Source: Schmidtea polychroa
Taxonomy: Eukaryota
Assembly: GCA_044892525.1 (NCBI GenBank)
Contig: CM097886.1
Coordinates: forward strand, 122,326,001-122,368,447
Direction: 5' to 3'
Length of the DNA: 42,447 nucleotides
The position numbers and the translations under genes are program-made. Positions 1,267 through 26,043 of the stretch are shown piece by piece (the stretch's first letter is position 1; each line of letters starts with the position of its first letter). Under the pieces are notes generated by a model that did not search any database, was not told the DNA's origin, and saw only the letters and a program-made list of their open reading frames with translations.

Positions 1267-1892
1267 TTGTAGCAGCAAACCCCAACCAGAACCATCAGAG
1301 TGACCAAACAATGCCAGAACTGAACTAAAAACACTATGTTGTGAAAAACTTTGTTGTGTATATAAACCATCACCATAAGTGATGCCTGCTTGGTCTTGAT
1401 TTGACCTATATCTTATTAATAAAATTTTATTGATGTTTATAATTTTGTTAATCACTATGTTATCTTTTTATGAATGTGCTTATTTTTTTCTGAGAGAATA
1501 AGAGTAACTCAAGTATGTAATTGCGGGACGCAATTTTGTCGGGTCCCCAAGTGATTTGTTGGGCTGAGTCGAAGGGTATCGGAGAGATTAGGTTAAGCAT
1601 AACGAAACTAAAATTAAAAATAAAATTAAAATAAACAAATCTACGAAACAAAGTAGAAAGGAAACAAGAAAAATAATAATTAGAAAATAAGAATTAAAAC
1701 AAAAAAATATAAAAACACGAAAAATTGAAATAGGACAATAAAATGACGGAAAATGACGTAAAATGCAGTAAATAATAAGGAAATTAAAGAAAATAAATAA
1801 AAAATACAATAAAAATAAGGAAAATAGGAGGAAATAGCTCAAAAACAAGGAAAACAAATTAAAGTAATAAAAATAAGCGGTACTCCATTCTG

Positions 1893-1980
1893 ATTGGTCC
1901 GCATAAATAGAAAACTAATATATAAGCAGACACTAAAATCATAACAATTACCGTTCATCTAACCACTACATTAGGTAAGT
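1893..1980 (+). promoter_or_regulatory. Pol II-type promoter directly after the A-rich arm: ATTGG (reverse CCAAT), TATATAAG, then a GTAAGT splice donor
   Basis: gATTGGt at ~1892-1898, TATATAAGCAG at ~1917-1929, GTAAGT at 1975-1980. The spacing is typical of an LTR promoter. Confidence 0.45.
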
Positions 1981-4051
1981 GTATTTTAATTAACAATGAC
2001 CGTTCATCTAACCACTACATTAGAAACCAAAATTCACAGCGACAGCCACAGATTCACCGAAATCATTTCAAGGACTATTCTAGGAATCCAGGAAAACTCA
2101 ACCTATTCTAGTATTAACCATTTCTGTTCAGAACTTTTCGATTCAGCCTATTTGAAAATTTGGTAAGGGATTTTTTCATTATTTAGGTTTACCATGCAAC
2201 GATCATGTATATTTATGAATTTATAGTAGTCTAAATTTAACAATAATTTTTCTCTTTTCGTTTGATTTGAAGGTTTTACTTAATTAAATGTTTTAGTAAT
2301 TTGGTAATAAACGTTTTATTAGGAATTAAAGGATTTTTTATTATTTGTTGATTTTATGATATTTAAAAATTTTGGAGAAACGTGGTGTTGAGATACTCCA
2401 TGTCATGGTGTGAGGTGCCTTCGGGAGCTCAGCCGGTGGACATGGGGTCTTTTCAATCACGCAGCTGATTCGGGCCGTAATGTGGGGGCTTCCTCACGGG
2501 TCCGTCGCTGAAGGAGTGACTAAATTCTATGAAAAACTCATACGAGGAAGTAGGGTAGGAGAATGAATCGATAAATAGGAGAAATTTTGATATGTTCGCG
2601 CAGTGATTGAGGGTGTCACACTAGCGTATTATAACAGCGTCTGATCAAGTTAAAAATCTTCTTTATCATCCAGTAGATCTAGGCAGGTCTTTCGTTAACA
2701 AAACCGTCCAACCTTGGTAGTGCTATAGTTGCCATAGTTCTCGAATTCGCTAGAAATTTAATCTTGAAGTTTTCAGCTACCGATTTTTGCGAGATCGCTA
2801 TTCCTATCGGCTATATGTCCTCTCAAGGATAAAATTGTATGAAATCGCGTAATTAAATAGGTTTAAGTAATCATTAAAAATAAAAGCGAATAACTCCAAT
2901 CAGTAAAAATGTATTTCTCTAAAAAATAATTCATTAGAATAATGTTTACCCAGTAAAGCATAAAATGTCCACATCCCGTCGAGTGGAAAATCCAGCATTG
3001 GAATAAGTAATAAATCTCCAATTTGACAGCAGTAGCCGGCATACATTGATAGCGATGGAGGGCCACGAGACGAGCTGGTAAATCATATTTGAGGGATCGT
3101 GAATTAATTCCAATATTGATGATGTAGAAATCCGGTTTTTCCAAAATATCCATGAGAGATAGCAGGCAGCATTTGAGGTAGATACATGGTTCGTCAGTGA
3201 TGTAATATGTCATAAGGGAAAATACATCTGCATGCATACACAGGCATAGCATAGAGCATGAAGACATCAGTCAGCGATTATGACTAAGTAGAAGTAGGTG
3301 AGAGAAAATTTTCATGCGCCATGCGCTTTAGAATAATCACAGAGGCTACTCGCAATATGTAGATTATACAGACTGTTAATCACAGGAAATCCAACCTGAC
3401 GCGTCAGCTGAAACATAATTCACTGAAACATACTACTGACAGTCACCCGATTTTCTCACCGATCAGAAATGATAGATAGCGGCCAGACAGACATTTTGGG
3501 TACACGTGGTTAAATTCATTTAAATATTCAACTTTGTCTTAATCATTATTATTTTCTCACAACTAAACAAGTGCAAATTAATTTAACAAACTTTTACTCA
3601 TCACAACAAATAATTGTAGAGCAATTGATAGAGTCTTATTTAGGTTGAATAATTAATTTAAAGATAAATCGCCTATCCATGCATAAGATCTACACATCCA
3701 AATTATTTGTCTTGGGGTAAATCTATAATTTAATTTAAACTCTCTTTAAATGCGAGGTACTGTTTTCAGGTAAATGGATTTAATTGTAATTTCATCAACC
3801 TGTAATTTCCCTTATCCAGGATAATACCTTACTTTCCTTCGGTAAAATCTTGCATGAATGATCCACTCTCGTATGAATAATGACCCCAAGCGTACAAGAT
3901 CTGTAGGGTAACGAAATCTCTTCAGGCTAATAAACTCGTTTTGTCTGTATGATAATCTATGATCGGTATGGTATGAGTGTGACTAGATGATGATGTCTCA
4001 CATTTGCCTTAGTTTGATTTTATTCGCATTTCCTCTTCATAGCTATTCAAG

Positions 4052-4792
4052 ATGTCTTCAAGTACCAACAACATTCTTAAACCTTGCTTTTCTTGCTCGG
4101 ACAAGAATTCAATTATCAGGGATCTACAAGCGCAAATTGGAAAATACAAAAGGAAGATCGATGAGTTGGAGGGGACATGGTTTAGTCCCACGCAAATGAA
4201 AGAGACCCAAAAGAAATTGTATCGAAGCGAGCACTGTCGTGATGCTCTCATTTCCGAAAGTCGGGCACAGAGGAGCCTGATAAAAGAGCAGTCGGAAGCA
4301 CTGCATAAACTATACATACAAGCGGCGACCACTAGAAAAATAGCGAAGATCCCAATTAACGAAGCCAGCAATCTCTTCCCAGCGCACCATGATACTTCCG
4401 TCAAGTTTTCGTCTCCACTCGCGAAGTCTTGCCATGGGTGTGTAGAGTCCGAGCTCTCTCCTAAAGACCCAGAGATTGTATTCACCGGAACCAGTAAGGT
4501 CCAGCCAAATCTCGCGTCCTCATCAACCATACAAACGATCACCTCCTCAAAGCCTAAGCGTCGACAGCTGTCTCGAGCTGAACGCAAACGGAAACAACGG
4601 GAACGGGCATCTGTCAAGCAGTGTACATCGTCAATCATCGCTCCAGTCAGCAATAGTGATCTGACGGTGGTCGTCCCAACAACCGGGATCTCCGGGCGAG
4701 TCATCTCCGCCGCCGGGGCGACGTGGGAGGAAAACGCCGCCGAGTTCTTTAATCTGGACGAGTTACTCGCCGACTCGGAGTGGGAGAAATGA
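4052..4792 (+). CDS. Uncharacterised 'TWFSP' coiled-coil/basic protein, intact copy (246 aa)
   Basis: Intact ATG-to-TGA ORF with higher GC than its flanks. KRKIDELEGTWFSPTQMKE motif, basic SKPKRRQLSRAERKRKQRER segment, acidic/aromatic C-terminus. Homologous to the ORFs at 12362-13024 and 20067-20507. AATAAA at 4928-4933. Confidence 0.75.
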   Translation: MSSSTNNILKPCFSCSDKNSIIRDLQAQIGKYKRKIDELEGTWFSPTQMKETQKKLYRSEHCRDALISESRAQRSLIKEQSEALHKLYIQAATTRKIAKIPINEASNLFPAHHDTSVKFSSPLAKSCHGCVESELSPKDPEIVFTGTSKVQPNLASSSTIQTITSSKPKRRQLSRAERKRKQRERASVKQCTSSIIAPVSNSDLTVVVPTTGISGRVISAAGATWEENAAEFFNLDELLADSEWEK

Positions 4793-4952
4793 GGATTTCC
4801 CCGGAAAATGGCCTCCTTCTCCGTAGAGGATTGAACTTCTTCTGTTGTCGTTTTCTACCTTGGTGTTATTCAGTTCGTGTAAAATTCCTTGTATAAATTC
4901 TCTAGGTGTTTATATAGTAAATTTAATAATAAAAATTTTTCGTTTATGTATG

Positions 4953-5563
4953 TGTTATCTTGTGTGTTGAACTTAGAGAATAATATGAACTTGCAAATGG
5001 CACTGAGAGTTGCAGAGAATAAGGAGTATTGGTCAATTGGTAATTCCAGCTAGAAATCTTGCGATGGGCGACAAAAGAAAATGACGTAAGTCCTTCTATC
5101 GGCAGTCAGGGTTAGGAAGTCGAGGCCTCAGTAGGGAGTAGTCCGAAGGAGATGGCTCACCTGCCTACTGGCGTCTCGCCGGCATAGCACAGTTCCAACG
5201 TGAAGCGATTCACGGGTGCTATGTTGGAGGGTAGATTATGTACGGGTCCTGCTCGGCAATGACCAGAATCAAGACGAGCGTAATCGATATGGGGCATTCA
5301 TCCTCTGGACTGAAAGCGGTAATGAAGGGGGTCATCCGGGTAGTCACCCGCCAACAGAAACAGTATTTTAAAAATATCATGGATATTAATGAATAAGGGA
5401 GTAAATAAAAATATAGATTATTACTCAATTGTATTAAACTGAATTTAGATTTAACACGTTCACCCCGGCGCGGATCACCGGTGGCCCGCACTAACCTGTC
5501 CCATCGGGCGGCGTGTACCACCGGTGGGACGTATTTGATTGTGTTGTTAGACGGTACGTAACA
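4953..5563. mobile_element. LTR-like segment (family 2; TGTTATC...TACGTAACA) nested in copy 1
   Basis: TGTTA/TAACA inverted termini. The right end gttgttagacggtacgtaaca resembles gttgttaaggttacgtaaca at 21675-21694. No matching TSD (tatg/ttaa), so the boundaries are tentative. Confidence 0.45.
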
Positions 5564-7014: not shown

Positions 7015-7050
7015 TATAGCGATAATTCACCAAGGTAAATTATCGCTATA
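7015..7050. repeat. 36-bp near-perfect palindrome (copy A of a dispersed hairpin element)
   Basis: tatagcgataattcacc-aa-ggtaaattatcgctata followed by TAGTTTTTTT. Related copies at 18977 and 40564. Confidence 0.85.
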
Positions 7051-8386
7051 TAGTTTTTTTAATAAAAAAGATAAGTAACAAACACATTCTTCTCCACGTG
7101 CAACATGTGAGATTGTAATTTACATTTAAATCATATAACTAACACAAGATAAAAAATAAGGTATTACAATACATTACAGGTATCTTCTTAATGTTGGATT
7201 AGAATCTTTTGTTTCATAGACTTTCCTTGACTCTTGGTCGGTTAATATGCCATTTCATACCACTGTGTATTAGGCCCGACAGATACAGATCGAATCTTAC
7301 CGAAGGGAGGGGTATACGAGGTCTATGGTGGTACTCCTTACGTGTGGGTCATAAATGGGCATAATCACTGCGATGAACTAAATTTTCCCTATATTCGTTT
7401 GGTAATCGCTTTATATTACTGTTACCTAGCTTAATGAACTATGCTAATATCTTTACTTTAATTATTATTTAGGATTGAAAACACATAAACATGAATTAGT
7501 CCACTGGTTTTTTATGACAAATTAATTTTACATTGATTTATTTGGCTGAATGTGTCGAATTTTAATTTATTCAATAAACACAACTATAGACAATTACTGT
7601 CAATTACCGAGATATTTTCCGCTAAGTGGAATCTATGGATTAAAGGTGACTTTATTTCTCTCTACTGATGTCTGGCATTTATGTGTAGTAATCGTGTTTA
7701 TTTTGATGTTGACATTACTAGCTCGGAATGGTAAGACAGTAACATTTAAAGATGTGCCAGTCTCCTTGCCTCTAACAGAAGACTCATTACTAACAGAAGA
7801 TATCCCTCCTATATAATTTCAGATTCCTTAATTGCTTGTCTCCCTTCACCTCCTTTACGAGAACCAAATGACTACTCCTTATATATTCCTTTAAAAACCT
7901 TAAACGAATATCCTTCTTCATCAGTTAAGAAAGCTACTAATTCTACACTTTCAAATATTAAATTTACAAAAGAAAACTAGACAATATAGTTTTACTAATA
8001 GAACTGATGTCCCAATTCCCCGATCTAATTTTACTACGAGTTTCAAGCAACTATTCCAAACAGTTTAATTTTAAATTGATAAACTTTTTCTGTTGAATGA
8101 AAATCGGTAAAGTTTATACAACAATTAGGTAAATTAACTTAAATAAAAAGCTTTAACATTTAACACAAGCTCCAACCGTGGATTAATAATCATTATTCCG
8201 CAGTCAGGCAATCTTTTACTTGCCCTTCACCTTATCACCAAATTCTACTAGTCCAACCCTAACATTTAGTCGCCCAACTGATCTGATAAAGTAAACATTT
8301 TGGTTGTCTCAAAATCTGAGCATATCATAGATCAAAATTACAATGTTAGAAATATTAATATTTATTGATCCAGATAATTAACTTAC

Positions 8387-9851
8387 TGTTGGGTCGCTTT
8401 GTGGTGTGTTATATTTAAATGTAGTAGGGGTATTTATGGATTTCGAATCGACTCCTTCCATAACGCCTTCATGACTATTGTCTTTAAACCATCTGTGTAC
8501 CCATGGAGACGACCATGTTGGTGCTGTACACAATGGCTAAAAATCCATGAACAGATGAGTTCTACTTATAAAACTACTTATTATATTTTCATTTTCGGGT
8601 TCTGGACTGCCGATTGGATGTCTTATGTCATTGTTAATTAGCTATTTATTTCTTAGATTATTGTTGTTGGTTCATGTAATTATGGTCCTCATTATGAGAT
8701 GTTTTCTAATGCTATCGTCCAAAATTTTACACGGGGATCCACCTTTATTTCCCAGTTAATAAATGTTGCAATATTCAAATTATTCTTCAAAAAATATTTC
8801 AGCAGGAATCTGCCTATATTTCTAATCCTGACCTATCTGATCTCATAACTACTCGAGGATTCTAGAATATTATCCCAAAAACTAAACCTATCTACTTGCA
8901 TTGGTCTTACTTCCTATATTTCTTACTCATTACAGTAAATAAAATGGTATCAGCGATCGACTCGGCGGAGAAGCCTCCGAACTGTACCGAATCATCTGAG
9001 TGTCTTGCACCTACGTCTATCTACCCATAAGATCAGAAGCCTGATCTTTGATTGATGGTGAGATCCATCTCCACCGTAACTATTATTCAAATCATAAAAA
9101 TTAAAAACGAACAATAAAAAGAAATTAACTAAAACTGAATTAAATACAAAGATTTATAAACTTAGAACATTACATTACCAAATCCAATTCAAGCTTACCG
9201 CAATGGCATAAACCGAAAAACTGAGAGCTACAGTTGAATTACATACAGTTGAATTACGTTATACACACGTATATGAGTGTGTGCAATTTTTTAATTTAAT
9301 TTAATTAATCAATTTATTTAATTTTTCTTAATTTTAATTATTTAATTTTATTATTTTATCCATAGAAATGTTTAGTTTCCATTCTTAAATTTATTTCTTT
9401 ATTTTATTTCATTCAATTTTTTAAATAAATTTTTCTGTTCCTTCTCTTAAAGTATGCACACATTGCCATAGCTCCTTCGTGTGTAAATACGAGCCATAAC
9501 ATCCCCAAATAGTTCGATTATGGTCCTTCGTATATAAATACGACCAATAATCCTATTAAAATTTCTTCATTTAATTAATTATTTTATTATTAATTATTAT
9601 TTTATTTATTATTATTTAATTTTCTAGTATGCAGATTTTCAGAATGCATTATTTTTCTCATAACTGTGTTGATTGCAACTTCTTGCGTTTCGTGATTTTA
9701 TTATACGTGTTTTATTTATCCTCCATGTGTTGTGTACTTTATTTTGTATTATTGGTGTATAATCATAAATTTTAATTCAATTTTGTGCGGTTTTTATGCT
9801 GTATTTTTGGCTCATTAAAAGAAACTCTCAATCTTTGGTTCTAGTTCAACA
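8387..9851 (-). mobile_element. Family-1 solo-LTR-like element (copy 2, 1465 bp, no ORF)
   Basis: Left end TGTTGGGTCGC. The block 8387-8630 aligns by eye with 11730-11965. Right end TTCTAGTTCAACA resembles TTCTAGCCCAACA at 26039, preceded by a T-rich arm. Flanks TTAC/ATAC (3 of 4 match). Confidence 0.65.
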
Positions 9852-12361
9852 ATACAAAACTAAATTTTTATTTACATTAACTTAGAAAACAAAATTAAAC
9901 TATAACAATTATTTAAATGGGCTTATCGTTGAGTCTCAAAAAATATGTTAAAAGTGTTAGTAGTATAACGCATTTTGGTATCTGTCAGGGTGGCTTTATA
10001 TATCCAAATCAGATTTTCTCTCGAATGGTCAGGTAGGAGCATAATTCCTTCTCTCTCATTGGTTAATACTATAGTTTAATTTTACTATTTTACCTGGTTT
10101 CAACCTGCTCAGGCCAACGAACACAAGAAAATATTCTGCTTAGAAAAGTGACGGGATGAACTGATCACAGAGAAACTTTTATCGGAGAGTAATTGTTTAT
10201 TTTTATTAATCTTAACGTTTATTTATTTTTCAAAAAGTGATCTTAAATGATTGAAGACAACTAGAAAAATTTTCTCTTTCTCTAAGTTGCTTAACTTGTA
10301 TTTTGGAAAAACAACTTTGCGAAAAATGTAAATTGTCATTTTAAACACAAGATAAACAAAAGAAACAATAAATTTGATTAAAAAGTGAAAAAAAAACATT
10401 ATTTCCATAAGAAGGTAAAGAAGTAACCTCAAATTTGTGTTATTTATCAAGTGAAAATTTGCATGTTTTAAGTTAGTTTTATTCGAATAATTGTTAATAA
10501 TAATATAATCAAGTTTATTTTTTATTAGGATGGATACATTTTTGTTAAATAAATCAGTTAAAGCACCAAATTCAGTGACCAAAAAAATCGAAATGAAAAG
10601 AAAATATGCTGAAGACTTCATCGAATTTGGATTCATTGCGATAGAGAAAAAGGGACAGGAGTTTCCCTTTTGTCTGGTGTATAATGAGACATTGTCAAAT
10701 GCGTCAATGATTCCCAACAAATTGATTAGACACAAGGATACTAAGCATCCAGAGCTCTTTTAAGAATCAAAACAATAATTTGATATTCGGCGAGCACAAA
10801 GCGAAAAACAAGCGTTTAAGATGAAAATTTTCTACAAGATTCCTGAAAAGGCTCAGATTGCAAGCTTCCAAGTAACATATCTACTCGTGAAAAAAAGAAA
10901 ACCACACACAGAAGCTGAAAGTATTATTGCTGCTGCAGTTTCGATTATTTTTAGCACAATCCTGGGATGTGAAGCTGCTGAGAAAGTGAAGAATGTACCA
11001 TTGTCAGCAAACACAATTTCAAGAAGGATTCAAGATCTATCAAAGGACATTGAATCTCAAATCATCGAGAATTTTCAGAGCTCGGAGGAGGAATTTTCCA
11101 AATTGTGGTCGCTGCAAGCTGACGAAACCACCGACATCAGCGGAAAAGCACAGCTCATTACATTCATCATATTCGTTCACGGTACAGAAGTAATGAACCA
11201 ATATTTGTTTTGCCAGGAGTTGATTGAAACGACCACAGGAAGAGATATTTTCAACTTTATCGATTACAATGTGAAGAACTATCAACTTCAACAGCAGAAA
11301 TGCGTCGGAGCTTGTACAGATGACGCTCCTCGTCTTGTTAGCCGTTCAGTCACCATTCAGAAGCTTTAGTTTCAAAATCAATTCCTTCGCAGCTCCTTAT
11401 TGTCATTAATCAAGTCGTCTCGATTGTCAACATTATCAAGTCAAAGCCTCTGAACTCCAGAATTTTCGGCCTTTTTTGCGATGCGATGGATTCGATTTCA
11501 AAACTCTACTCTACAACACAGAAGCTCGATGGCTGTCCAAAGGAAAAGTTCTTGAGCGTGTTGTTTACCTCAAAACTGAAATAATTTCATTTCTTGAAGG
11601 TGAGGATATCACATTCGATTTTGATTTTCGAGACAGTGACTGGTTGTTGAAGGTATCATTTCTTATTGATCTTTTCAACAGACTCAATGTTCTTAATAAG
11701 AGTCTTCAGGGATTAGCTGAAAATATTATTGTTGGGCGCTTAAGGTTGTGTCCAACTTTTGGATGTCAGGGGTAGTTGTAGGTGCACAGGTAGACTCCTT
11801 CCTAAACGCCAATGATGATTGTTGTCTTTACAACACCTGTGTACCCATGGCAAGGGCCATCTTGGTGCTGTGCACAATGGCTGGGAATTCATGAGCAGGT
11901 CCTTTGATAAAACTACTCATAATATTCTAAATTCGGGTTCAGGAATGCCGATAGAAGGGCTTACATCTGTATCGACTACATATAACAAGCTACACTCGAA
12001 ACCTCTGGTCCAGTGATCTCTTTCGATCTCTTTCGATCTCTTTCTCATTGAAACTCACATCACCGTGTCACCATGATTTTACCTCTCGGAAGACAGGTCA
12101 CCGAACAATATCATTTTATTTTTAAGGAATAGAAATTGGTAAATTACATAGGACATTGAGATTACATCAAGACATCATAAACATAAAGAGGGAATTTATC
12201 ACTCATAAGTTCAAAGTAAATTACGATCAAATGTGTCGAAGCGTGTCAGAACACTGAATGAGTCTATGTGGTTGGGGATTTTCATTGCTTGACATCGAAC
12301 TGAGGTATTGAGATATTACCGAGTTCCCTCACACGCCTATTTCGAGTTGGTTGGCTAAAAC

Positions 12362-13024
12362 TCACTGCCCTGGGCTTCCAGCATTAGTGTCGACATCAAT
12401 CTCCAGTTGCAGATCTATCACCCACGGGGTGTTTGTTGCCGGTATGATCCTGTAAGGAGGTGGATCTGTTGCTGCCCGAGCTGGATATGGTCTGGGCTTG
12501 GTGGATAGCGGGGCTGCAAATAGTGCGGCTTCGACAGTAGCTAGTTCGTCCCTTTTCCGCTTGGATCGTTCCGCGCGTGTGAGACGCTTTCGTTTCGGTC
12601 GGACAACCGGGATAGAAGTCGATGACAAGGCTGTAGGAGCTGGTGGGGGAGTGACAGGTACTAGTGCCTTAGCTGGCATCGTACTCGTCTCCACATATAC
12701 GACATTCGGCTGCGTGGTTAAGGCAGGAAGACTTGGTCAGGCCAATAATGAATCGGGAAAATGTTGTTCCTGTCGGTAATCGGATATTCGGAGACACGCT
12801 TTTGTAATTCATGTTCGGAGTAAATTTATGTAGCGTTTCCGACTGGGCTTTGATGGTGAGTCGTGGCTTTGATTTTCTTCTAGCAAACTATCTCGGCAAT
12901 GTTCCAAGCGTAAGATTTTTCTATTGGCTTCCTTCATCTGTGGCGGGGCGAACCACGTCCCTTCCATCAGATCAATGCGTTTCTTTAGGTTTCCGTTTTC
13001 GGTGCGTAGCTGTCTCGTCTCCAT
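12362..13024 (-). pseudogene. Frameshifted 'TWFSP' family ORF
   Basis: KKRIDLMEGTWFAPPQMKE...LEHCRDSLLEE. Alternative frames give RLTIKAQSETLHK and YSEHELQKRVSEYPITDRNNIFPIHY, matching the 4052 ORF (RSLIKEQSEALHKLY...PINEASNLFPAH). Then RPKRKRLTRAERSKRKR. Confidence 0.8.
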
Positions 13025-13078
13025 GGTCTTAGGCCAGTTTTAGGGAGGTTTGACTCGGACATATCTATAAAAGGAAAG

Positions 13079-13091
13079 ATTTATAGCTGAA
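13079..13091 (-). promoter_or_regulatory. TATA motif TTCAGCTATAAAT upstream of the TWFSP ORF
   Basis: 13-mer identical to 20580-20592, 55 nt upstream of the ATG at 13024. Confidence 0.6.
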
Positions 13092-15105
13092 TTCGTCACA
13101 TAACAGATACTAGGTCGTCGACCAAAGTATACCAGATGGTCTATTAGGATTTATTTATACATCGGAGTCGTTACGATAAAGATTGAGGGTCGCCGAAGAC
13201 ATCTATCGTCGGTCAAGTATGACAGTTAGATTTTTAGAGAAAAATATATACTCTGTTCATGAAGTCATTTCAAAAAATATATACTTGCCCCATCCCCCTT
13301 GATCGTTTAACCTTGTGCATTTGATAGTCATTATCTAGTTTCAATTTCTGACCTCTCAATGCCCTATTCTCGTAGCTAAATCACTCTATTTAAACGAAGG
13401 TTCCTTATGGGTTAAATGGATAATTTGATCGATGGATGACTGAAATATTTTATCCCACATTTTTACAAGTTTTAATCAATTTTACCACATCGATGTCAAC
13501 GCACTGGCTACTTCAAATTATTCTAGTGGTTTATTATACCCCGCAAGCAAAACATTCGCATTTCCCATCATAAATAATTCATTCTATATGAAATTAATAT
13601 CACGCTAGTGGGGTTTGAAATGTTTATATTTGTTATACAATCAATGCCTATTCATGCTTCCTCATTTCTGTTCCACGACAATCTACGCGTAATGATGTTC
13701 CGTAGTATCAATACTGATGGATTTCAGTCAGAAATGTTTACATTATGATATGTGAATTGCGTTTCCGGTCTCGCTAATGCCATGCTAAAATTTACTGTTG
13801 TTTACATTTTCCTATTGAATCGAAGTGCAAAGATTACGATAGACGAGGGCGATATTTCCGGCCTTGCATACGATTTACTGATTATAATGAACCACGACAC
13901 CCTGTGCCGTTTAGTTTTACTTTTGAAGGTTTTTAGTTTACTTTGATTTCTAATTGTTTTCTAAACTCATTCTATTTTATCTGTCTTCGTTTTCAATTTA
14001 ATTACTACTTTTACTCTACTTTATTTTAATTATTTTAAATTAATTGCTATCCTTAATCTATTTTATTTATAATTGTTTTAAATTATTATTATTTATTAAT
14101 ATTTTTTATTACCTTGTTGTTTTTAATTTACTTTTCTTAGTTGGTGTCCTCATCTTAAAAAAGAACCAAGGTGCTATGTTTAACTAAGAGAAAAAAAACT
14201 GATTATTGGAACTTTTACTGTTCCTGGCCCAACATTATGGCGGTAACATTAAAGCTTCTTTCATTTAAAGAAAAACTTCACTTGTTCTTCAGAAAAATCA
14301 AGGAAAAAAGCTTTGATCTTCTCCATCGTTGATAAATTCGCCAATAAGGATGAAATTTCTGAGTTTGCTCTCCAAACCATGGAAATGCTTTTAAAAGCAC
14401 TCGGCAATTATTTCCCCTCCTTAAACGTCAACCTTTATCAGTGGATTTTGAATCCATTTGGAACAAACGAATGTCTTGAATTTTCTACGAAAGAAGAAAA
14501 ACAACTTATTGGTTTAAAAAACGACATGGTCAATAAAATTAATTTTGAACAAAAAGGACTGGAAGAATTTTGGATTTCTCTAGGCAAGGATTATCCCGAG
14601 TTGAGCATCAAAGCGTTAAAATTATTAATTCCGTTTTCTACTTATATGAACTTGGATTTTCGGCACTGGTTGAAATCAAATCAAAGAAACGTGAAAGATT
14701 GCGGACAGTTGATGAAGAAATCCGAGTTAGTTTGTCGTCGCTCTTGCCCGGAACATCAAGCACATCCATCACATTGACGTTTGAGAAGGAACAAATAAAT
14801 AATAATGTGTTAATTTTTGTTTCTCAAACCCGCAAGTTAAACAGCATTAAACTTTCATAAAATTTGATGCAAAATCTTATATCGAAAATATTTGTCAGGG
14901 GTGTCGCGAATTTTTTTTAAGTGAATTGGCTGTTGCTATTGAAAGAAGTTTGGAGAACACTGAGCTTTTTTATTTTATTTAAATCTATTAAATTATTCCA
15001 AATTTATCACCAGAATTAAATTATTATTATTATCAGTCATCAAAATCAAATATTTCATTATAACTGGTCACAAACTCACTCTACATTTCACTGTCAGTTG
15101 GTTAT

Positions 15106-16378
15106 TTATGATTGCTCGTGAATCAATTGGTACAGTGAGTACTTGGTATCCAGCATTTCTGTCATATACTGGCTTCGCCCATGCCGAATGATTAGCGCTG
15201 TCAGCATATTTCTCACTGTTTTACTCCGTAAAATATTTCCGTTTTTAGTATCGACCGCATCAATTGTCACTGCATAACCAAATGGCCATCCCATTTTATC
15301 ATTAAATTCTCCATATAACAAATGAAAAAACATAAATTTCACTTGACTTATTAATTATGCTCAAGCACATTTTGTAACCGGGTCGCCCTGAGTAAAATGG
15401 CTCGCTATAGATCTGATAATCATATTTATGTGATAAATTTATTATTTTACATTCAAAAAATCCAAAATTTTCAATTTCCAAATTTCCTTTAATTTCCGAA
15501 ATTTTGCTCAATTCATCCTGAACATAAATTCCACCTTCAAATATTTCAATTATAAAATCAATTTCACTTTTATATTCTCTTTCTGCTCATAATTTTGTTA
15601 TAATTCATCAATTTGCAGCCTCATCTACTCGGCATTTGGAAAATGATATCGAATCAATATTAAAATAAAAATCAAACTTCATTTATTTATTCCACATTTG
15701 CTTTATTCTCAGCTCTCAATGATCAATTATCATTCTTCTCTGCCATCATTTCTTCATTCAATACCTCTATTTCTTTACTGTTGTCCATTTCGCACATTTT
15801 CTGCTACCATCGCAAATTTCAAAATATTTCAATAAATCAATTTACTTGTTGTATAGCTAATTGTAACTTCATTGATTCCATTTCCTTTCGTAAATTATTG
15901 ATGAGATCAACCATCAGGTTGTTATGGTAGCAATGGTCTTCATTAAGATGATCTTTCATTTCGTCAATCATCATTTTATTCATTCCACACCCAATTCCAA
16001 AAAATGGACAGCTAATAGCCTTTTTGGTACATTTTCTCATGTGATATTCTATCATGCCCAATTTATCTTTGAATTGGCAATTATACAATGGACATTTTAC
16101 TACTGTTTCCGAAATTCTAAAATTAGCTGGATTATCTTCACAAATGTCTTCTTTCAAATTTAAAGTTTGCACGTGACAAAATTTTGCTGCTCCTGGACAG
16201 AATTTATCGATCCCATCAAATAATCTTTGATGTAATCGGAACAAAAGCGACAACCACAAGGTGCGTTACAGGCGTTTTTTATTAAACATTTGCAAATTCT
16301 GCATATTAAATCATTACTGATTTCATTGTCAACTTCAAATTTATTCTCATTCATAATTTTCCAAATACTTGTAAACAT
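15106..16378 (-). pseudogene. TRAF-like gene with frameshifts and stops (RING, TRAF Zn finger, coiled coil, MATH)
   Basis: CRICKCLIKNACNAPCGCRFC RING; KCPLYNC...HMRKC...SCPFFGIGC...HLNEDH Zn finger; MATH fragments SEPFYSGRPGYKMCL and LLYGEFNDKMGWPF lie in different frames. Could be a pseudogene or assembly error. Confidence 0.85.
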
Positions 16379-18862: not shown

Positions 18863-18976
18863 TAGAATGTTACATTTTTATCATAATTATGAGTCAAAAC
18901 AGAATCTCAATTAGGTTTTGTTTTTACTCCCGTTTTGGCGCCCTCAAAGTCATGAAATAAAGAGTCTTAAAAACTA

Positions 18977-19012
18977 TATAGCGATAATTTACTATAGTAA
19001 ATTATCGCTATA
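18977..19012. repeat. Perfect 36-bp palindrome (copy B)
   Basis: TATAGCGATAATTTACTA|TAGTAAATTATCGCTATA. Confidence 0.95.
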
Positions 19013-19119: not shown

Positions 19120-19692
19120 AAGAATTATATGAAAGATTATATGAAAGATAGATATATTAGGAAAGACCTGTGCCGTCAGATTCAGGAAACTATTCAAAGT
19201 TGTGAGACTTGTCAAAAACCAAGGCTATAACAATTACAACGAAGGAACCAGTAAAAAACTAGAATCAACTGAAATGTTCGAAATTATATTCGTGGATATA
19301 TGTGGACCAATGCAAGAAACAAAAGGATGTAAGAAATATATATTGGGTATAATAGACCAGTATAGTAAGTATCAAGTCTTGACAGCTATAACAAGACAAG
19401 ACGAGGAAACAATAAAGAAAACGATTTTAGAAAAACGGATTTTAAGATTTGGGTGTCCAAAGGAGATAAGAGTTGATTGTGGGAAGGCGTTTGAATTAGG
19501 ACTGATGAGAGAATTTACAAAGAAACTTGATATTAAGTTATGTTTTTCGAGTCCATAGCATCACCAAACAAATGGACAGATAGAAAGGCAATTCAGGACA
19601 ATACGAGAGCTGATAAATACTACTTTACGAGGCAGAATGAAGACGGATTTGGCAGAGATACTACCAGAAGTCTAATTTACATTAAATGCAAC
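19120..19692 (+). pseudogene. Ty3/Gypsy integrase, Zn-binding and rve core part (interrupted)
   Basis: IQETIQSCETCQK; IIFVDICGP...YILGIIDQYSKY...FGCPKEIRVDCGKAF...SP*HHQTNGQIERQFRTIRE. Frameshift near 19258 and in-frame stops. No RT/RNase H between gag and integrase. Confidence 0.92.
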
Positions 19693-20066
19693 TGGTGGGT
19701 TACTGGTAGTTAATTAATTATGCTCTTATGCTGTTACCAGCGTAACCCAGGATACAACCTTATTTTCCTCTTGGTACCCGTTGAGCAATCAACGTTGGTA
19801 CTGTACCAAGGGGTTGAGTACTCGCAAAAAGTGAGCGCGTCAAGCACTGTAATTGTCGAGCACTCTATGGGTTCACGGACGCCGATAGAAGGCACGTGTC
19901 CGATTTATTTCGGTCTCTCATCGAGATCGTTTTTCCAAGCGCCTTCCCGCCAACCATCCTGTTTCAGACAACCGCAAAGTTCAATCACATACTCATTAGA
20001 TAACAAGAATCATTTATTAAGCCACCACTATATTACAAAGATTGTTTACGCACTCTCGAACGTCTC

Positions 20067-20507
20067 TCAGGATCGTGGATTGGCTTCAGTCTCCTTCAAT
20101 TTCTCCTGTTCGGCTAACCAGGGCCTTTTCAATTTGTCGCGGGTATTCCGCCCTAGCCGTTTGCGTTTCGGCTTGCTTGCCTGGGCTGGTGGGTATATCT
20201 GGGCCAACTCCACGGAAAGTGGACGAATCTGCTCGCAAAGGGTGTCCTGGACGACTCTTTCGTTCAATTTACTCTCGAGCGAGCGCACTTGTAGCTTCAG
20301 CGCTCGGATCTCGAGTTGATCTTGCTCCGCCTGGGTCTGGAGTTGCGAGATGCGCGTGGTTTGTTTCTTCATCTCAGCCGGACTGAACCACGTACTTTCG
20401 AGTTCCCGGCATTTGATCTTGAACTTCTCGACCCGACTTCGGAGGTCTTCGGCTTGCTGCTGGGCCTGTTCACGGTCCTTTCGTAGGTTTTCGAGGAATG
20501 TGTACAC
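20067..20507 (-). CDS. Divergent 'TWFSP' family ORF (start uncertain)
   Basis: KIKCRELESTWFSPAEMKK and SKPKRKRLGRNTRDKLKR. The ORF track starts at GTG; the nearest ATG (20547) is 40 nt upstream and out of frame, so the 5' end may be frameshifted. AATAAA at 20018-20013. Confidence 0.7.
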   Translation of the reverse strand: MYTFLENLRKDREQAQQQAEDLRSRVEKFKIKCRELESTWFSPAEMKKQTTRISQLQTQAEQDQLEIRALKLQVRSLESKLNERVVQDTLCEQIRPLSVELAQIYPPAQASKPKRKRLGRNTRDKLKRPWLAEQEKLKETEANPRS

Positions 20508-20579
20508 TGAATGGAAACAATAATAAAATTCCCTCGCTCGTTGCCATGCGCGTAAAGGTGATTCACTTAGTGGTGTAAA

Positions 20580-20592
20580 ATTTATAGCTGAA
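20580..20592 (-). promoter_or_regulatory. TATA motif TTCAGCTATAAAT upstream of the TWFSP ORF
   Basis: Identical to 13079-13091. Confidence 0.6.
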
Positions 20593-20816
20593 AGGTGAGT
20601 GAGGTCCCCCCGATCCTGGAGACACCCATAAAATATAACCGCAGAGAAATTAATTTGCTATATGAGGAAGACACATGAACAAATATAATATTAATAAGTT
20701 TAATAAAGTAACATCCTACAAATTGTCGTATCAATTATTAAAGGAGTCAAACACAATTACAACAACATTATGTCCGATTGATCATATAGTTCATTCAAGT
20801 CATCACAGTCGTGGGA

Positions 20817-21185
20817 TTAGGCAGGGTTCTTCCGGGGCCTTCCCCGTTTCCTCGGAGGTGCCTCGGCCTCTTCTAATTCTTCCAGGGACACCCCTTCTCT
20901 TTCGGCTCTGATTTGTAGATCGATCTTCCTGAGCCGGGTCTGGGCAGCTTCCACATCCCAGGCCGCCTGATCTCGGGCCTCTTGCAAACGGTCATTCTCC
21001 GGTTCCACCTTCACCCATGCCTGGGCATCGGGCTCTGGGCCGGTCCGGATAATCCGATTGGAACAGTCCAGGTCCCGCCCCTGATACCATCGATGAATAT
21101 GGTGCCAGATGTACCGCGTGCGAAGGCGGGTGATTGTCCATTGCTCGTCCTCTTCGCTGCTGGGGTTATCGTTTGGTGGTGCCAT
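20817..21185 (-). CDS. 122-aa protein with a short coiled coil and a C-terminal AT-hook
   Basis: Intact ATG-to-stop, GC-rich ORF. LQEARDQAAWDVEAAQTRLRKIDLQIRAE, then PRKRGRPRK (canonical R-G-R-P AT-hook core). Confidence 0.7.
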   Translation of the reverse strand: MAPPNDNPSSEEDEQWTITRLRTRYIWHHIHRWYQGRDLDCSNRIIRTGPEPDAQAWVKVEPENDRLQEARDQAAWDVEAAQTRLRKIDLQIRAEREGVSLEELEEAEAPPRKRGRPRKNPA

Positions 21186-21294
21186 GCCTGGAATGTATAC
21201 GTTAATACCCGTTTAACTCACGTCACTTATCAATGGTCGTCATAATAAAATACATCGAATTAACTCACATATCAATGACTAAGTTTATTACGAT

Positions 21295-21694
21295 TGTTAT
21301 AACTACTTTTATCAAAGAAAAATAAGTTTTGTTTATAGGTTTTACCAATTTAATTTTTAACTACTTAAAATTAAATAACTTTTATCAAAAAAAAAATAAA
21401 GTTTGTGTATAGGTTTTACTAATTTAATTTTTAACTACTTAAAATTAAATAACTTTTATCAAAAAAAAAATAAAGTTTGTGTATAGGTTTTACCAATTTA
21501 ATTTTTAACTACTTAAAATTAACTAACCTTTATCCAAAGAAAATAAGTTTTGTTTATAAGTTTTACCAATTTAATTTTACCTACTTAAAATTAAATAACT
21601 TTTATAAAAAAAAATAACACTTACAATTATTATCATCACCCTGATTTAAGGCCTTTTGTTTGATCACGGTAATCGTTGTTAAGGTTACGTAACA
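21295..21694 (-). mobile_element. Family-2 LTR (TGTTACGTAACC...TATAACA on the minus strand), probably a 3' LTR
   Basis: On the minus strand it is preceded by the purine-rich AGAAATGTGGGAGT (PPT-like, 21695-21708). Terminus resembles 5543-5563. Partner LTR and TSD not found. Confidence 0.45.
21305..21620. repeat. Tandem repeat, ~73-74 bp unit, ~4.3 copies
   Basis: Unit ttttatcaaa...ataggttttaccaatttaatttttaactacttaaaattaaataac recurs at about 21307, 21380, 21454, 21528 and 21600. Confidence 0.9.
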
Positions 21695-22278
21695 ACTCCC
21701 ACATTTCTTAATTTTAGTCAGCACGGATATAATAAAGGGAAGAAATTCAGGTATCCAATATTCATATCTTAAGATTTTTCATCGCAACTTAGTGATATCA
21801 GTAGCCGACCCCAAATCTCGATCAGTTACTATTGACTGATAATATGCTATGGTCCCTCGCATGGACGAAGAGAGCTTGGCGATGCCAAGGAGAAAAGTTG
21901 GCGATTGCCTCGATAATTGAGTCGATATTAACTTATAAAGAACTCAGTGATCTCGATTAGTAACCTTTGTTTGGAATTTTTTGTTTCGCTTGGATGCTAA
22001 TATAACGTGAATCTTCGATTTTGGACAAAGTAAAACTTTCTAGTAAGGAAAAACTTATTTTAACGAAGATGCTTCGATTTCTTTTAATTTTTGAAATTTC
22101 GGGAACTTCCCAGATCGGGATCGGATCGATGAATAAGGTTAGTATGGATGATGATGATGATAACAATAGTAATTATAGTAAGAGTAATAGCAATGTCAAT
22201 TATGATAATAGTAATAAATAATAATAATGTTTATCCTGACAATACCAATGGTAATAGTAATCACACTAGAATAACGGT

Positions 22279-22428
22279 AATCATGATAATATTAGTAATG
22301 ATGATAATAACTTTGATGATAATAATAGTGTTAACAATAGCAGTAGGATAGTTAATCATGATAATATTGGTAATGATGATAATAACTTTGATGGCAATAA
22401 TAGCATTAATAATAATAGTAGGATAGTT
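22279..22428 (+). repeat. 75-bp tandem duplication within an AAT/GAT-rich low-complexity tract (~22145-22430)
   Basis: Two units, each aatcatgataatatt[a/g]gtaatgatgataataactttgatg...agtaggatagtt. Confidence 0.85.
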
Positions 22429-25400
22429 TCCCATTTTTCCATTCGAGATTCCCCTTTCCTAATTGTAGAAATTCTACGCTTATGATTTAGGGAGTTACCT
22501 TTACAATCTACAGATTTCGGTCTAGAATTCAGCGTTTATGTTTTACCATTTATGAACTTCTACCTTACAGTGTCTAATTAAATATATCTCGTATATAGTT
22601 TAATACTTTATGATTTGCTATTCTGTATTTTGTTATTTTATAATCGCTGCTTCAAGTGTTGTAATTTATAAATTGGTGTTAGCTGAACTTGTAATTTTCG
22701 GATTCCTAATTCGTAGCGTTTTATAAATTTATAATTTATCAGTTCTCGTTTCATGAGTTAATTTTGTCGATTTTAGAAATTTATCCTCTACGATCTACAA
22801 ATTTCCTTTCACTATGATAATTGTGCACTCTTGGCTCGGCAATTGGTATGGTAAATGCGGGACTATCGTCTAGATTCTAGTCCATGTTGATTGGACGTCT
22901 AGCTGCAGTGCGAGGTCAGAGTTACCAGTCGGTGTGCTTGCAACTTCTATGCCCCGCAGAGTGAGAGCTTTTTGGTTTACCACTCATACGTTCTAGGTAA
23001 CCTACAATCCTGGTAAGATAACTGGAATAATTAATCGATTTCTCGTTCCTCTAATTCCAGAATGCGGAATGTGCAACTACGTCACTGGTGACTCACAAAT
23101 TTGTAGATTATATCAATTACCTGATTGGTCTACCGATTGGCTAGCATGACTGCATGTTACTAAAAATAGATTTCATGCGTGTTGTATCGATCGTTTGATT
23201 CCTCCGTAAGTCTAATTTTGTATAATTCTTAAGCCATAATTTATGATGATTAAACAGGTTCGTCGTAATGCTGTCGGAAGCCTCTTTGCGGATAATTTTA
23301 ATTCTGAAGATTTTGGACTATCGGAACTATTGAGTTCCTAATCAGGCGATACCCGATATAACGTTTGCCCTGCCAACTGCTTTGTCGAATGCTCCATGGA
23401 TTTATCAAACCCACTCGCTTCAAGTTATTCGTTGGATTTCGAAAACGATCTCACCGATACAATTGGACGTAAAACAGGATGACATCGCAATCGCTCAACT
23501 CCAATCTCAGATATCCATATTGAACGTTGCATGTGATTCCAATGACAATTATGATTTCCCATAAATTTTTTTATGTAATAAAGTATTTGTATGGTAAACT
23601 GTTTTTGTTTTTATTCAAGCTTAGCTGCACAAAATTATTCGAGTTTACTTGGTAGTGTGACCTACACTTTGGCTTTAGGGTATCTTTATTAATCGTTTTG
23701 CACCAGGATTTTTCATAAGTGGGACGGAATTTCCGTTTATTCTAGAAGCTGGACAAAATTAAGATTTATAGTTCGGAGGTCTTTAGAGGACTTATAGAGC
23801 AAACAAAACTTAGATTATCATCGGAAATTTTTAATCATTATTCTAATCGAGAGTCAAATAAAATCAGGTGTCTGGGTTATACGTTTCTAAAGCACAAGCA
23901 TCAATCATAGACTCAGAGTTTATACTTTGGAAATTCCAGAAAACATAACCTAAATATCTCGAGATTATGAACTCAGTTACCCTATCAAGCTAACATTATG
24001 CTTTAAGTATTCAGTCAAATTATAGTTTATAATCAGTTACCTATTTAAGGAAATGCCTAATACTACCCTATAATTTAGGTATGCATAAATTATCGATGGG
24101 GGAATAGAAGTTAGCATTATACCTTTCAACACTCAAAAATTATATTTTATATGAAAACCCTAATTTCTAATTTAAATAGCTAAATATGTAAATAATTTAT
24201 GAAAGGCTATTATATTTTTCTACCTTATATTTTAAAACTAGATTCCGTAATCTATTAAAGTTACACTTTATCAATTGGTACTATTACATAATATACTCTA
24301 TATTTTCAACGGGCATGCAAAGCCATATTTCTACTTCAACATTAATAAAATATACTATAACCCAAAATTATATCCCAAGATCTTCACACATTATATTTTA
24401 AATAGGCATAAGGTTATATTTCATAGTAAAAATTTATAAATTATTTCTGAATGCAACATAAAAGTATATAATTAATAATTATAAATTATACTTCAAGCAA
24501 AGTTATTTTAAAATTTCTAAACATTTAACATTTTTAGATTACATTTTCGGACTCATTATTAAGACATATTTCATAAATAAAGGGTAATACGTATTTATAG
24601 GTTGTAGCTTCGACTACAAATTTGAGCCATAGATTTAAAGTTAATTAAGTACTTTCATTTGATTACTTACGTTTGTCGAACTTCTTTACGAGGATTTCTA
24701 CATTTACTCTAAAAATTAAAGAAATTTTAAAATTATATATCTCAATGCAGTTCGACAAACGTATAGGCATAATCGAGTTTTCCCATGATGATCAACCGAC
24801 TACATGTGTTCAATTTGGGTCTGAGTTCTACTCAATTATGACCTTAGTGTAACCCTATTGTCTACGATTTTTAATGTTGAGATTAAATATGTTTGCTTGT
24901 ACTCGGGAAGAATGCTTGCTTACACGGCCCCACTGTGACCGCTACGACAAGCCCTATTGTAATGTTGAGTCGAAACATCACTGTCGACCGATAAATAAAT
25001 ATATGGAGCCATAGCGGAGGGGTTTTATCGACACAACTCCATGGTAGAACCATGAAGTGGCCGACCTCCGATGACCGAACAAAAAAAAATATATACAGGA
25101 TATTGCATGTCTGCATGTTTCAAAAAAATTTAACATCAAATGCAGGACTGAATAGAGACGCACTGAGACGCCGCTGATCAGTCGTATTTTAAAAAAAATT
25201 TTAATAAAAAAAAATTTGGTCTTATGGATATTAAAATTAGTTTACATTAAAATGATTACATTAACCATAGGTGACATCAAAAAAAAATTTCTACTTACTA
25301 TTAGTTTTCGGAAAAACTTTAACAAAATATTGGCATAAACAAAAAAATGATTGATTGTGACTGAAACGTGTCAGTATATATACCTATTTTGTACACGTGT

Positions 25401-26043
25401 ATGTATTGATGCATTAAAACAAACTCGAATTCTTTTTATTCCAGAATTTTCTATTTTGCGATTTTGATATTTTTAATGGCAATTTTTGTGCCATAATTTT
25501 TGTTTTTATTTTTATATTTTTATTTTTTAATTATTTTTCATTAATTTTACGTCCATGATGGATTTGGAACGGTTCCAGAACATTCTGTTTTACTTTTAAT
25601 TTAGTTTTTATTTTAACTGATGTTTTTTATGAATTTCTTTTTGAGATTTTTTTATTTTTAATACTAATTTATTTATTTTCCTTAACTTTTGTTGTTCTAG
25701 ATGACTTTTGTGATGGTCATCGCCATTTTATAGAATGTTCTGGGTTTTTCTGGAATGTTTTACTGTTTTTATCGTCTTTTAAGTTATTCGAGTTTGCTTT
25801 TGGTAATTCTATGTTTATTTGGTTATTTTTGAGTTAGATTTTTGCATCACTTCTTGCTTTTGTATAATTTTATTTAATTTCTTTGTTTATGTTTTTGTTG
25901 CTTTCTCCTTTAGTTAATATTGTTTATTTGGTGTAGGTTTTAATATTTAACTCTACTTGGTGCTTTTTTACTTGCTGTGTACCTACACGTTTCGGTCATA
26001 ATTAGAAGTTTGGGTCTAGAAATCAGTTCTAGCCCAACACAAC

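What the first reader, a model, noticed from the sequence alone, without database searches (positions are those of the whole stretch)
11730..14234. Family of gene-carrying solo-LTR-like elements (TGTTGGG...CCCAACA, 4-bp TSD): four copies within 25 kb
Seen: four elements share asymmetric ends (an A-rich arm starting TGTTGGGC.AG.A at one end; a conserved block ending GCCCAACA or GACCCAACA-like at the other), only 7-8 bp of terminal inversion and 4-bp TSDs (TTAT and CAAC perfect; GATT/C and T/ATAC 3 of 4). They have no internal direct repeats and no gag/pol, yet three contain an ORF cassette. Established: TG...CA ends with 4-bp TSDs mark Ty3/Gypsy integrase products; solo LTRs arise by LTR-LTR recombination; ORFs inside LTRs are rare (MMTV sag, nef overlap); very long LTRs occur in giant Gypsy elements such as planarian Burro. 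Inference: multi-kb LTRs that themselves encode an accessory protein, so every solo LTR leaves an expression cassette behind. Alternatively these are non-autonomous units mobilised by a Gypsy-type or Ginger-type integrase.
Basis: partly seen in the sequence, partly recalled or inferred. Interest (0 to 1): 0.9.

Follow-up and report, generated by a model that had tools for sequence, protein, structure and literature searches.

The report
Long LTR-like units carrying a gene
Four diverged mobile units, most likely solo long terminal repeats of Gypsy-type retroelements in an AT-rich animal genome, share integrase-type ends, a conserved orphan protein gene and a conserved hairpin, an unusual cargo for an LTR whose LTR identity could not be tested here.

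Summary
Four discrete insertions, re-delimited as E1 1557-5356(+), E2 8387-9851(-), E3 11730-14234(-) and E4 19693-26039(-), make up 33% of the window. They share TGTTG...CA ends, 6-8 bp of terminal inversion and an A-rich 5' arm. They have no terminal direct repeats and no gag/pol. E3 and E4 have perfect 4-bp duplications and each splits another gene. E2 matches 3 of 4, E1 only 2 of 4.

The four are not close copies. Only a ~230-nt 3' block aligns at DNA level.

Two things are new:
- The ORF belongs to a real orphan protein family, with 17 database clusters and no Pfam, PDB or fold match. It has a (G/S)TW..P helical hairpin, a basic helix and sometimes PPxY. Non-synonymous change is far below saturated synonymous change.
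- Every unit carries one two-stem hairpin 69-181 nt from its 3' end, with compensatory changes in 9 of 17 pairs.

Best reading (0.55): solo LTRs of a Ty3/Gypsy-type lineage whose long LTR carries an accessory gene. No paired copy flanking gag-pol could be looked for, so this stays inferred. Ginger and TRIM/LARD membership fail tested features. "Every solo LTR leaves a cassette" is overstated: one unit lacks the ORF and two of the three ORFs are broken.

The parts
1557..5356 (+). E1, 3800-bp unit. 5' TGTTGGGC, 3' ...CGCCAACA. Flanks GATT/GAAA (2 of 4).
4052..4792 (+). E1 ORF, 246 aa, intact. The (G/S)TW..P helical hairpin and the basic helix are both present.
5092..5104 (+). E1 copy of the CCTTCTATCGGCA motif, preceded by TGACGTAAG.
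5175..5231 (+). E1 conserved two-stem hairpin.
   Evidence: z = -4.25
8387..9851 (-). E2, 1465-bp unit without the ORF. 5' TGTTGAAC, 3' ...GACCCAACA. Flanks TTAC/ATAC (3 of 4).
8485..8541 (-). E2 conserved hairpin.
11730..14234 (-). E3, 2505-bp unit (the finding). The TTAT duplication lies at 11726-11729 and 14235-14238. The unit splits a hAT-like gene.
12362..13030 (-). E3 ORF of the same family, broken by two in-frame stops. A PPPY motif lies after the basic patch.
11946..11958 (-). E3 copy of the CCTTCTATCGGCA motif.
11829..11885 (-). E3 conserved hairpin.
19693..26039 (-). E4, 6347-bp unit. 5' TGTTGGGC, 3' ...CCCACCA. The CAAC duplication lies at 19689-19692 and 26040-26043. The unit splits an integrase remnant.
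20067..20507 (-). E4 ORF, 146 aa as listed, of the same family (STWFSP subgroup). It has no ATG start ahead of the conserved domain.
   Evidence: P0004, E = 3e-28
20817..21185 (-). E4 second ORF, 122 aa, with an AT-hook-like C-terminus. It is not shared with the other units.
19880..19892 (-). E4 copy of the motif, with one mismatch.
19762..19818 (-). E4 conserved hairpin.
21305..21617 (.). Tandem repeats of 74 bp, about 4 copies, inside the AT-rich 5' part of E4. A second array of 75-bp repeats lies at 22198-22428.
10821..11729 (+). Neighbour: left part of the decayed hAT-like gene split by E3. The right part resumes at 14239.
19140..19692 (+). Neighbour: left part of the integrase remnant (rve) split by E4. 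The right part is 26044-26330. It is 5'-truncated, with at least six in-frame stops and at least one frameshift overall.

Best explanation
The four units are solo long terminal repeats of several old, related families of a Ty3/Gypsy-type (integrase-inserted) retroelement lineage. The host has an AT-rich, probably flatworm, genome.

Shown:
- Each unit is a discrete insertion with TGTTG...CA ends and 6-8 bp of terminal inversion.
- Where the duplication is preserved, it is 4 bp.

Inferred:
- The internal gag-pol part was lost by recombination between the two LTRs.

The LTR has two parts:
- A variable A/AT-rich 5' part of 1.1-5.4 kb.
- A GC-richer 3' part of 0.9-1.4 kb. It holds one ORF, an AATAAA, a conserved motif (CCTTCTATCGGCA), a conserved hairpin, and the terminal CA.

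The ORF encodes a small orphan protein with a helical hairpin built around (G/S)TW..P, a basic helix, and in some members a PPxY motif. I infer that it is an accessory or Gag-like adaptor. The helical hairpin would serve oligomerisation and the basic helix nucleic-acid binding or nuclear import. PPxY would serve contact with WW-domain ubiquitin ligases.

I infer that the hairpin acts in the sense-strand RNA of an R/U5-like region, in reverse transcription, packaging or 3'-end formation.
For: - Ends, duplications and split neighbour genes.
- TGTNR termini and 4-bp duplications are reported for Gypsy LTRs (PMC2836005).
- Multi-kb LTRs are reported for Ogre (1.9-6.5 kb). For planarian Burro, LTRs of at least about 2.5 kb are my arithmetic from a total above 30 kb and an internal region of up to 25 kb (PMC6431247).
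- There are no terminal direct repeats, so the units are not complete LTR elements.
- All four share a homologous 3' block.
- The hairpin has 95.6% of cells paired and 9 of 17 pairs changed on both sides. No shuffle of 500 reaches this, and slid controls give 32-41%.
- Three of the four fold into the shared hairpin as their minimum-energy structure, with z = -2.1 to -4.3.
- There is exactly one hairpin per unit, and the high-scoring matches (64-71 bits) all lie on the ORF strand.
- The ORF family is real outside the window: 17 clusters, best E = 1.6e-16.
- The ORF is under long-term constraint: pN 0.39-0.51 against pS 0.78-0.93.
- The fold is predicted with confidence (pLDDT above 90 for residues 20-100).
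- The units are compositionally bipartite.
Against: - No pair of units flanking gag-pol, a primer-binding site or a polypurine tract was seen. The defining LTR context is untested.
- In the 17 database gene models the ORF is fused to many unrelated host domains and once to a hAT transposase, never to gag, RT or integrase.
- E1 lacks a matching duplication (2 of 4).
- The TATA-like box (AGCTATAAAT, 55-79 nt before the ORF in E3 and E4) and the AATAAA are weak signals in an AT-rich genome. There are no transcript data.
- The function of the protein is inferred from motifs alone. Pfam, PDB and Foldseek gave nothing.
Confidence: 0.55

Rival explanations
1. The units are complete non-autonomous elements that are inserted as single units by an integrase-type DDE enzyme supplied in trans. 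That enzyme could be a Gypsy integrase or a Ginger-like transposase. The ORF would be their only gene.
For: - All four stand alone and have their own ends and duplications.
- E2 looks like an internally deleted derivative that keeps both ends.
- The ORF has its own TATA-like box and AATAAA.
- Database gene models never join the ORF to gag or pol.
Against: - Terminal inversion is only 6-8 bp, against 40-270 bp in Ginger. The duplications are not CCGG/CCGT (PMC2836005).
- A unit without terminal direct repeats has no known route through reverse transcription (established knowledge of LTR-element replication).
- The strongly asymmetric subterminal sequences fit U3 and U5 better than transposase-binding ends.
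- No two units are close copies, so nothing here points to recent independent spread.
Confidence: 0.2
2. The ORF cassette is a separate cargo, either a nested insertion or a captured host gene, and is not part of the original unit.
For: - The ORF region is GC-richer than the 5' part.
- E2 lacks the ORF.
- The protein has no retroelement domain.
Against: - The ORF lies in the same orientation and position class next to the shared 3' block in E1, E3 and E4. The GC-rich part runs without a break to the terminus.
- No repeats or duplications bracket the ORF.
- The relatives found are not stand-alone host genes. Most are gene models that fuse the domain to unrelated host domains, and a few are short models or fragments without context.
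- Constraint has lasted across units that no longer align as DNA.
Confidence: 0.08
3. One or more units, E1 above all, are single LTRs left by truncation or by recombination between different elements, not by clean LTR-LTR recombination within one element.
For: E1's flanks do not match (GATT/GAAA) although its ORF is intact.
Against: No remnant of an internal region, primer-binding site or purine tract lies next to E1. E3 and E4 have perfect duplications.
Confidence: 0.1

Closest known systems
Solo LTRs of Ty3/Gypsy LTR retrotransposons, including the very long LTRs of Ogre and planarian Burro/GYPSM1
   Same: TGTNR...CA ends, a short terminal inversion, a 4-bp duplication, multi-kb size, tandem repeats inside, and no internal genes.
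   Different: A conserved protein gene sits inside the repeat. The link to a gag-pol partner is not shown. No Burro LTR sequence was at hand to compare.
Retroviral genes that lie in or overlap U3 (MMTV sag, primate lentivirus nef; from my own knowledge)
   Same: An accessory ORF sits in the LTR, upstream of the R/U5-like end.
   Different: No sequence or fold likeness was found. Here the whole ORF, with possible signals of its own, lies inside the repeat. The host is an invertebrate genome.
Ginger1 and Ginger2 DNA transposons and their non-autonomous copies (PMC2836005)
   Same: TGTNR termini, a 4-bp duplication, and a size of 2.6-7 kb.
   Different: Ginger terminal inverted repeats are 40-270 bp, and the Ginger1 target is CCGG/CCGT. 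Here the inversion is 6-8 bp and the targets are AT-rich or mixed.
TRIM and LARD non-autonomous LTR retrotransposons
   Same: No gag/pol, and integrase-type ends.
   Different: TRIM and LARD elements have two direct LTRs around a core. None is present here.
Structured R/U5 RNA elements of retroviruses and LTR retrotransposons (from my own knowledge)
   Same: A conserved stem-loop with covariation about 70-180 nt from the U5-side end, on the coding strand.
   Different: Rfam has no match. Its role is untested.

Membership tests
LTR of a Ty3/Gypsy-type retrotransposon (solo LTR) | 5' TG...CA 3' termini following the TGTNR pattern, with a short terminal inversion | tested here: met
   All four start with TGTTG. 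Three end in CAACA and E4 ends in CACCA. The inversion is 6-8 bp.
LTR of a Ty3/Gypsy-type retrotransposon (solo LTR) | Target-site duplication of 4-6 bp | tested here: met
   TTAT and CAAC are perfect and lie at split reading frames. E2 matches 3 of 4 and E1 only 2 of 4.
LTR of a Ty3/Gypsy-type retrotransposon (solo LTR) | The same repeat occurs as a direct pair around gag-pol, with a primer-binding site and a polypurine tract | not testable with these tools
   The 42-kb window holds no pair. No other genomic copy could be fetched.
LTR of a Ty3/Gypsy-type retrotransposon (solo LTR) | U3-R-U5 layout with a promoter and a polyadenylation signal | tested here: inconclusive
   A TATA-like box lies before the ORF in E3 and E4, and an AATAAA lies after the ORF in E1, E3 and E4. 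There are no transcript data.
Ginger1/Ginger2 DNA transposon (non-autonomous copy) | Terminal inverted repeats of about 40-270 bp | tested here: not met
   Only 6-8 bp are inverted. The criterion comes from PMC2836005.
Ginger1/Ginger2 DNA transposon (non-autonomous copy) | Ginger1 target CCGG or CCGT; Ginger2 target RTATAY | tested here: not met
   The duplications are TTAT, CAAC and TTAC/ATAC. The Ginger1 target is clearly not met. No RTATAY site was evident around the insertion points, but this was not checked formally.
TRIM/LARD non-autonomous LTR retrotransposon | Two direct terminal repeats around a non-coding core | tested here: not met
   Self-comparison of each unit finds no terminal direct repeat.
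Burro/GYPSM1 giant Gypsy elements of planarians | Sequence identity of the unit to a Burro LTR | not testable with these tools
   No Burro sequence or Repbase copy was at hand. Only the LTR size range is comparable (PMC6431247).
Known protein families (Pfam, PDB, BFVD folds) for the ORF | A significant profile or fold match | tested here: not met
   Pfam gave nothing above its thresholds. A PDB profile search gave only furin, from the host part of a chimeric row. Foldseek had no match at E <= 0.001: best PDB E = 0.19, best BFVD E = 0.0099 with poor overlap.

The most novel reading that the evidence does not exclude
The units are a new kind of single-unit, integrase-inserted element. Each would be a self-contained module with one selected gene, its own expression signals and a structured RNA signal. 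It would spread without ever being part of an LTR pair, using the integrase of Gypsy-type elements in trans.
Probability: 0.12. Interest if true: 0.85.

Novelty: new variant of a known kind. Interest (0 to 1): 0.55.

Why it matters
LTRs are normally seen as non-coding control regions. If these units are LTRs, a whole lineage of invertebrate retroelements has kept a protein gene and a structured RNA signal inside the repeat through very deep divergence.

Every insertion, and every solo LTR while it stays intact, would then place a gene with possible signals of its own next to host genes. The database gene models that fuse this ORF to about a dozen unrelated host proteins show that this already confuses annotation and may create chimeric transcripts.

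The protein family is unannotated. Its PPxY and basic-helix features make a testable link to ubiquitin-ligase adaptors and Gag-like proteins.

Tried and rejected
Searches for relatives:
- A word-indexed protein search with the E1 ORF found no hits.
- The same search with a family alignment added only P0019, P0004 and P0022.
- Exact look-ups of four window ORFs found nothing on record. The source genome and organism therefore stay unidentified.
- The TRAF ORF search gave only unnamed MetaClust hits.
- Related-locus scans of JGI metagenomes and IMG/VR found nothing. Two alignments were too diverse to use.
- A DNA pattern scan of metagenomes gave 19 matches. None has the hairpin, so they are chance.
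- The only outside DNA is two short ENA contigs, L001 and L002. They differ at only 3 nucleotides in the ORF, too few for a selection test.

Other tests:
- Rfam and tRNA scans found nothing relevant.
- I tried to show that the hAT flanks of E3 abut on one protein by comparing each flank, apart, with P0014 and with a second hAT copy. This was not informative. Pfam did not name the hAT pieces, and only a weak match to a hAT catalytic region was found.
- Aligning the DNA upstream of the ORFs was uninformative.
- I found no primer-binding or purine tract next to E1.
- The 3' region of the integrase remnant shows no unit-like LTR start.

Slips, stated as required:
- Searches printed raw frame translations in which stops show as asterisks. 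No break coordinates were listed and nothing was built from these translations.
- Consensus lines printed by the alignment tools were not used.
Full report
**Setting**

The window is AT-rich, with 30% GC outside the units. It is full of transposon debris:
- a piggyBac transposase fragment (DDE_Tnp_1_7, E = 1.2e-26);
- a decayed hAT-like gene;
- an integrase remnant (rve, E = 1.5e-12);
- a TRAF/MATH ORF.

It holds one N gap at 27839-28149, which I left alone. The organism could not be identified. Exact look-ups of window proteins found nothing. The TRAF search gave only unnamed entries. A flatworm source is my guess from composition and gene content, not a result.

**Observation**

The unit at 11730-14234 has the stated ends and a perfect TTAT duplication. 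TGTTGGGC occurs four times against 0.48 expected.

By following the homology of the ends I re-delimited four units.

| Unit | Coordinates | Strand | Length | Flanks |
|---|---|---|---|---|
| E1 | 1557-5356 | + | 3800 bp | GATT/GAAA (2 of 4) |
| E2 | 8387-9851 | - | 1465 bp | TTAC/ATAC (3 of 4) |
| E3 | 11730-14234 | - | 2505 bp | TTAT/TTAT |
| E4 | 19693-26039 | - | 6347 bp | CAAC/CAAC |

Together the units are 33% of the window.

The CCCAACA at 4675 and 10713 lies inside reading frames, and neither these nor the TGTTGGG at 18286 are termini.

For E3 and E4, an open frame of another gene stops at one edge and resumes at the other. These genes are the hAT-like gene and the integrase remnant. 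Both units are therefore clean insertions of their whole length.

**What the units share**

In element orientation, each unit has these features:
- It starts with TGTTG(G/A)(G/A)C.
- An A-rich arm (45-66% A) follows from about nt 100, for 100 to 500 nt.
- It ends in CA, with 6-8 bp of terminal inversion.
- It has no terminal direct repeats. The only internal repeats are tandem arrays in E4.

The units are not close copies. blastn links only E2 and E3 (177 bp at 77%) and a 25-nt stretch of E1 and E3.

A multiple alignment of the last 300 nt shows one homologous 3' block in all four, with 58% mean column identity. In it, the motif CCTTCTATCGGCA occurs in E1, E3 and E4 against 0.47 matches expected. 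In E1 it is preceded by TGACGTAAG.

Each unit is compositionally bipartite. The 5' part has 29-34% GC and the 3' part has 36-49% GC.

**A conserved hairpin (new)**

Sixty to eighty nt after the motif, all four units can form the same two-stem hairpin with a conserved one-sided bulge. It lies 69-181 nt from the 3' end.

- 95.6% of cells pair.
- 9 of 17 pairs have changes on both sides.
- No shuffle of 500 reaches the observed values for the share of cells paired, for changes on both sides or for the covariation score; one shuffle reaches the count of further pair types.
- Partners slid by 1-3 columns pair at 32-41%.
- Three of the four sequences fold into it as their minimum-energy structure, with z = -2.1 to -4.3.
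- A covariance model built on these four finds them back, as it must, at 64-71 bits on the ORF strand. It finds no further copy in the window; the best other match is the reverse strand of E4's own hairpin at 15 bits.
- Three G-U cells would be mismatches on the other strand. This is weak support for a sense-strand RNA.
- Rfam has no match.

With four sequences, and a structure derived from them, this is good evidence but not final.

**The ORF (new)**

E1 carries an intact 246-aa ORF. E3 carries the same gene with two in-frame stops. E4 carries a shorter version with no ATG start. E2 has none.

The copies share L(E/M)(G/S)TWF(S/A)P and a KPKR..L.RAER.KRK-like patch.

A profile search of 1.84 billion representatives found 17 proteins with E-values from 1.6e-16 to 3.3e-4.
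- Two close members (P0004 and P0021, one cluster) are intact 157-aa ORFs on short ENA metagenome contigs.
- Most of the others are UniParc gene models in which the domain is fused to unrelated host domains. These include an SLC6 transporter, ribosomal L21, furin, actin, a tyrosine phosphatase, a citrate transporter, ABC, ankyrin and CH domains, plus one hAT transposase. I also read CRAL-TRIO and glycine-cleavage P parts from the sequences of P0011 and P0009. That reading is my own and no tool confirmed it.
- None is fused to gag, RT or integrase.

The invariant positions are G/S-T-W..P and E.R.QR.

In most members that carry the motif, a basic cluster follows it by about 70-125 residues. PPxY follows 30-47 residues later in E3, P0011 and P0014, and is also present in P0009.

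AlphaFold2 gives a confident helical hairpin (helices 15-41 and 46-98, pLDDT above 90) and a basic helix at 175-195. The rest is disordered.

Pfam, a PDB profile search and Foldseek against PDB and BFVD give nothing meaningful.

Between E4 and L001, between E1 and E3, and between E1 and E4, the non-synonymous difference is 0.39-0.51. The synonymous difference is saturated at 0.78-0.93. The protein has therefore been kept by selection while the surrounding DNA diverged beyond alignment.

**Signals**

AGCTATAAAT lies 55-79 nt before the ORF in E3 and E4. One or two AATAAA lie between the ORF stop and the motif in E1, E3 and E4. These are weak signals in such a genome. Without transcript data I cannot say whether the ORF lies in U3 or in R.

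**Interpretation**

The ends and the 4-bp duplication are those of an integrase-type insertion. TGTNR termini are shared by Gypsy LTRs and Ginger transposons (PMC2836005).

Ginger membership fails on terminal inverted repeat length and on the Ginger1 target. TRIM/LARD membership fails for lack of paired repeats.

Very long LTRs are on record for Ogre (1.9-6.5 kb). For planarian Burro they follow from my arithmetic: a total above 30 kb with an internal region of up to 25 kb (PMC6431247).

The strongly asymmetric subterminal sequences and a structured element near the CA end fit a U3...R/U5 layout. I therefore favour solo LTRs of a Gypsy-type lineage whose LTR carries an accessory gene (0.55).

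The defining test is a pair of units around gag-pol with a primer-binding site and a purine tract. It could not be run, because no other genomic copy was reachable.

The main rival is a single-unit element inserted in trans (0.2). It is not excluded, and it gains a little from the absence of gag-pol fusions among the database models.

The idea that the ORF is a nested or captured cargo is unlikely (0.08). Its place is constant, it is continuous with the terminus, and nothing brackets it.

E1's unmatched flanks may mean recombination between different elements.

"Every solo LTR leaves an expression cassette" is too strong. Of the four units, one has lost the ORF and two carry broken copies.

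**Novelty**

No paper in the library describes such units in planarians. I had no access to Repbase or Dfam, so the family may already be listed there without its ORF being noted.

I rate it a new variant of a known kind, of moderate interest.

Searches printed raw translations with asterisks for stops.

Noticed in passing
window 7010-7058 and 18969-19017: A 49-nt palindromic sequence occurs twice, with arms 90% complementary, and each copy is itself a hairpin. The second copy sits just upstream of the 5'-truncated integrase remnant. It may be the end of another transposon.
   Followed up: no
window 16770-17891(-) and 15837-16259(-): There is a TRAF-like gene. A 373-aa ORF has a MATH domain (E = 2e-28), and a second ORF has a TRAF zinc finger. 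Burro elements are reported to carry MATH/TRAF domains (PMC6431247), but no gag/pol lies next to this one.
   Followed up: partly
window 5793-6152(-): A piggyBac transposase fragment (DDE_Tnp_1_7, profile positions 118-237 of 349), decaying towards E1.
   Followed up: partly
window 20817-21185(-): A second 122-aa ORF lies inside E4, upstream of the family ORF, and ends in an AT-hook-like RGRPRK stretch. It is absent from E1-E3 and its relatives are unknown.
   Followed up: partly
window 1-1556: A strongly A-rich stretch (AT skew 0.37) carries two long K/E/R-rich ORFs of 192 and 203 aa with no Pfam match for the one tested. They are probably compositional artefacts.
   Followed up: no
window 34225-34727 and 36022-36378: These are fragments of what looks like a second hAT-like gene, read by eye from the ORF translations only. 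They were too diverged to help place the E3 insertion site.
   Followed up: partly
L001 (638 bp) and L002 (549 bp), ENA assemblies ERZ2271643 and ERZ2270917: These low-coverage metagenome contigs carry intact 157-aa members of the ORF family, about 41% identical to the E4 ORF. A related animal's DNA or RNA is therefore present in those samples.
   Followed up: partly
window 38350-38940 and 42368-42446: Microsatellite-like and 13-bp tandem low-complexity tracts.
   Followed up: no
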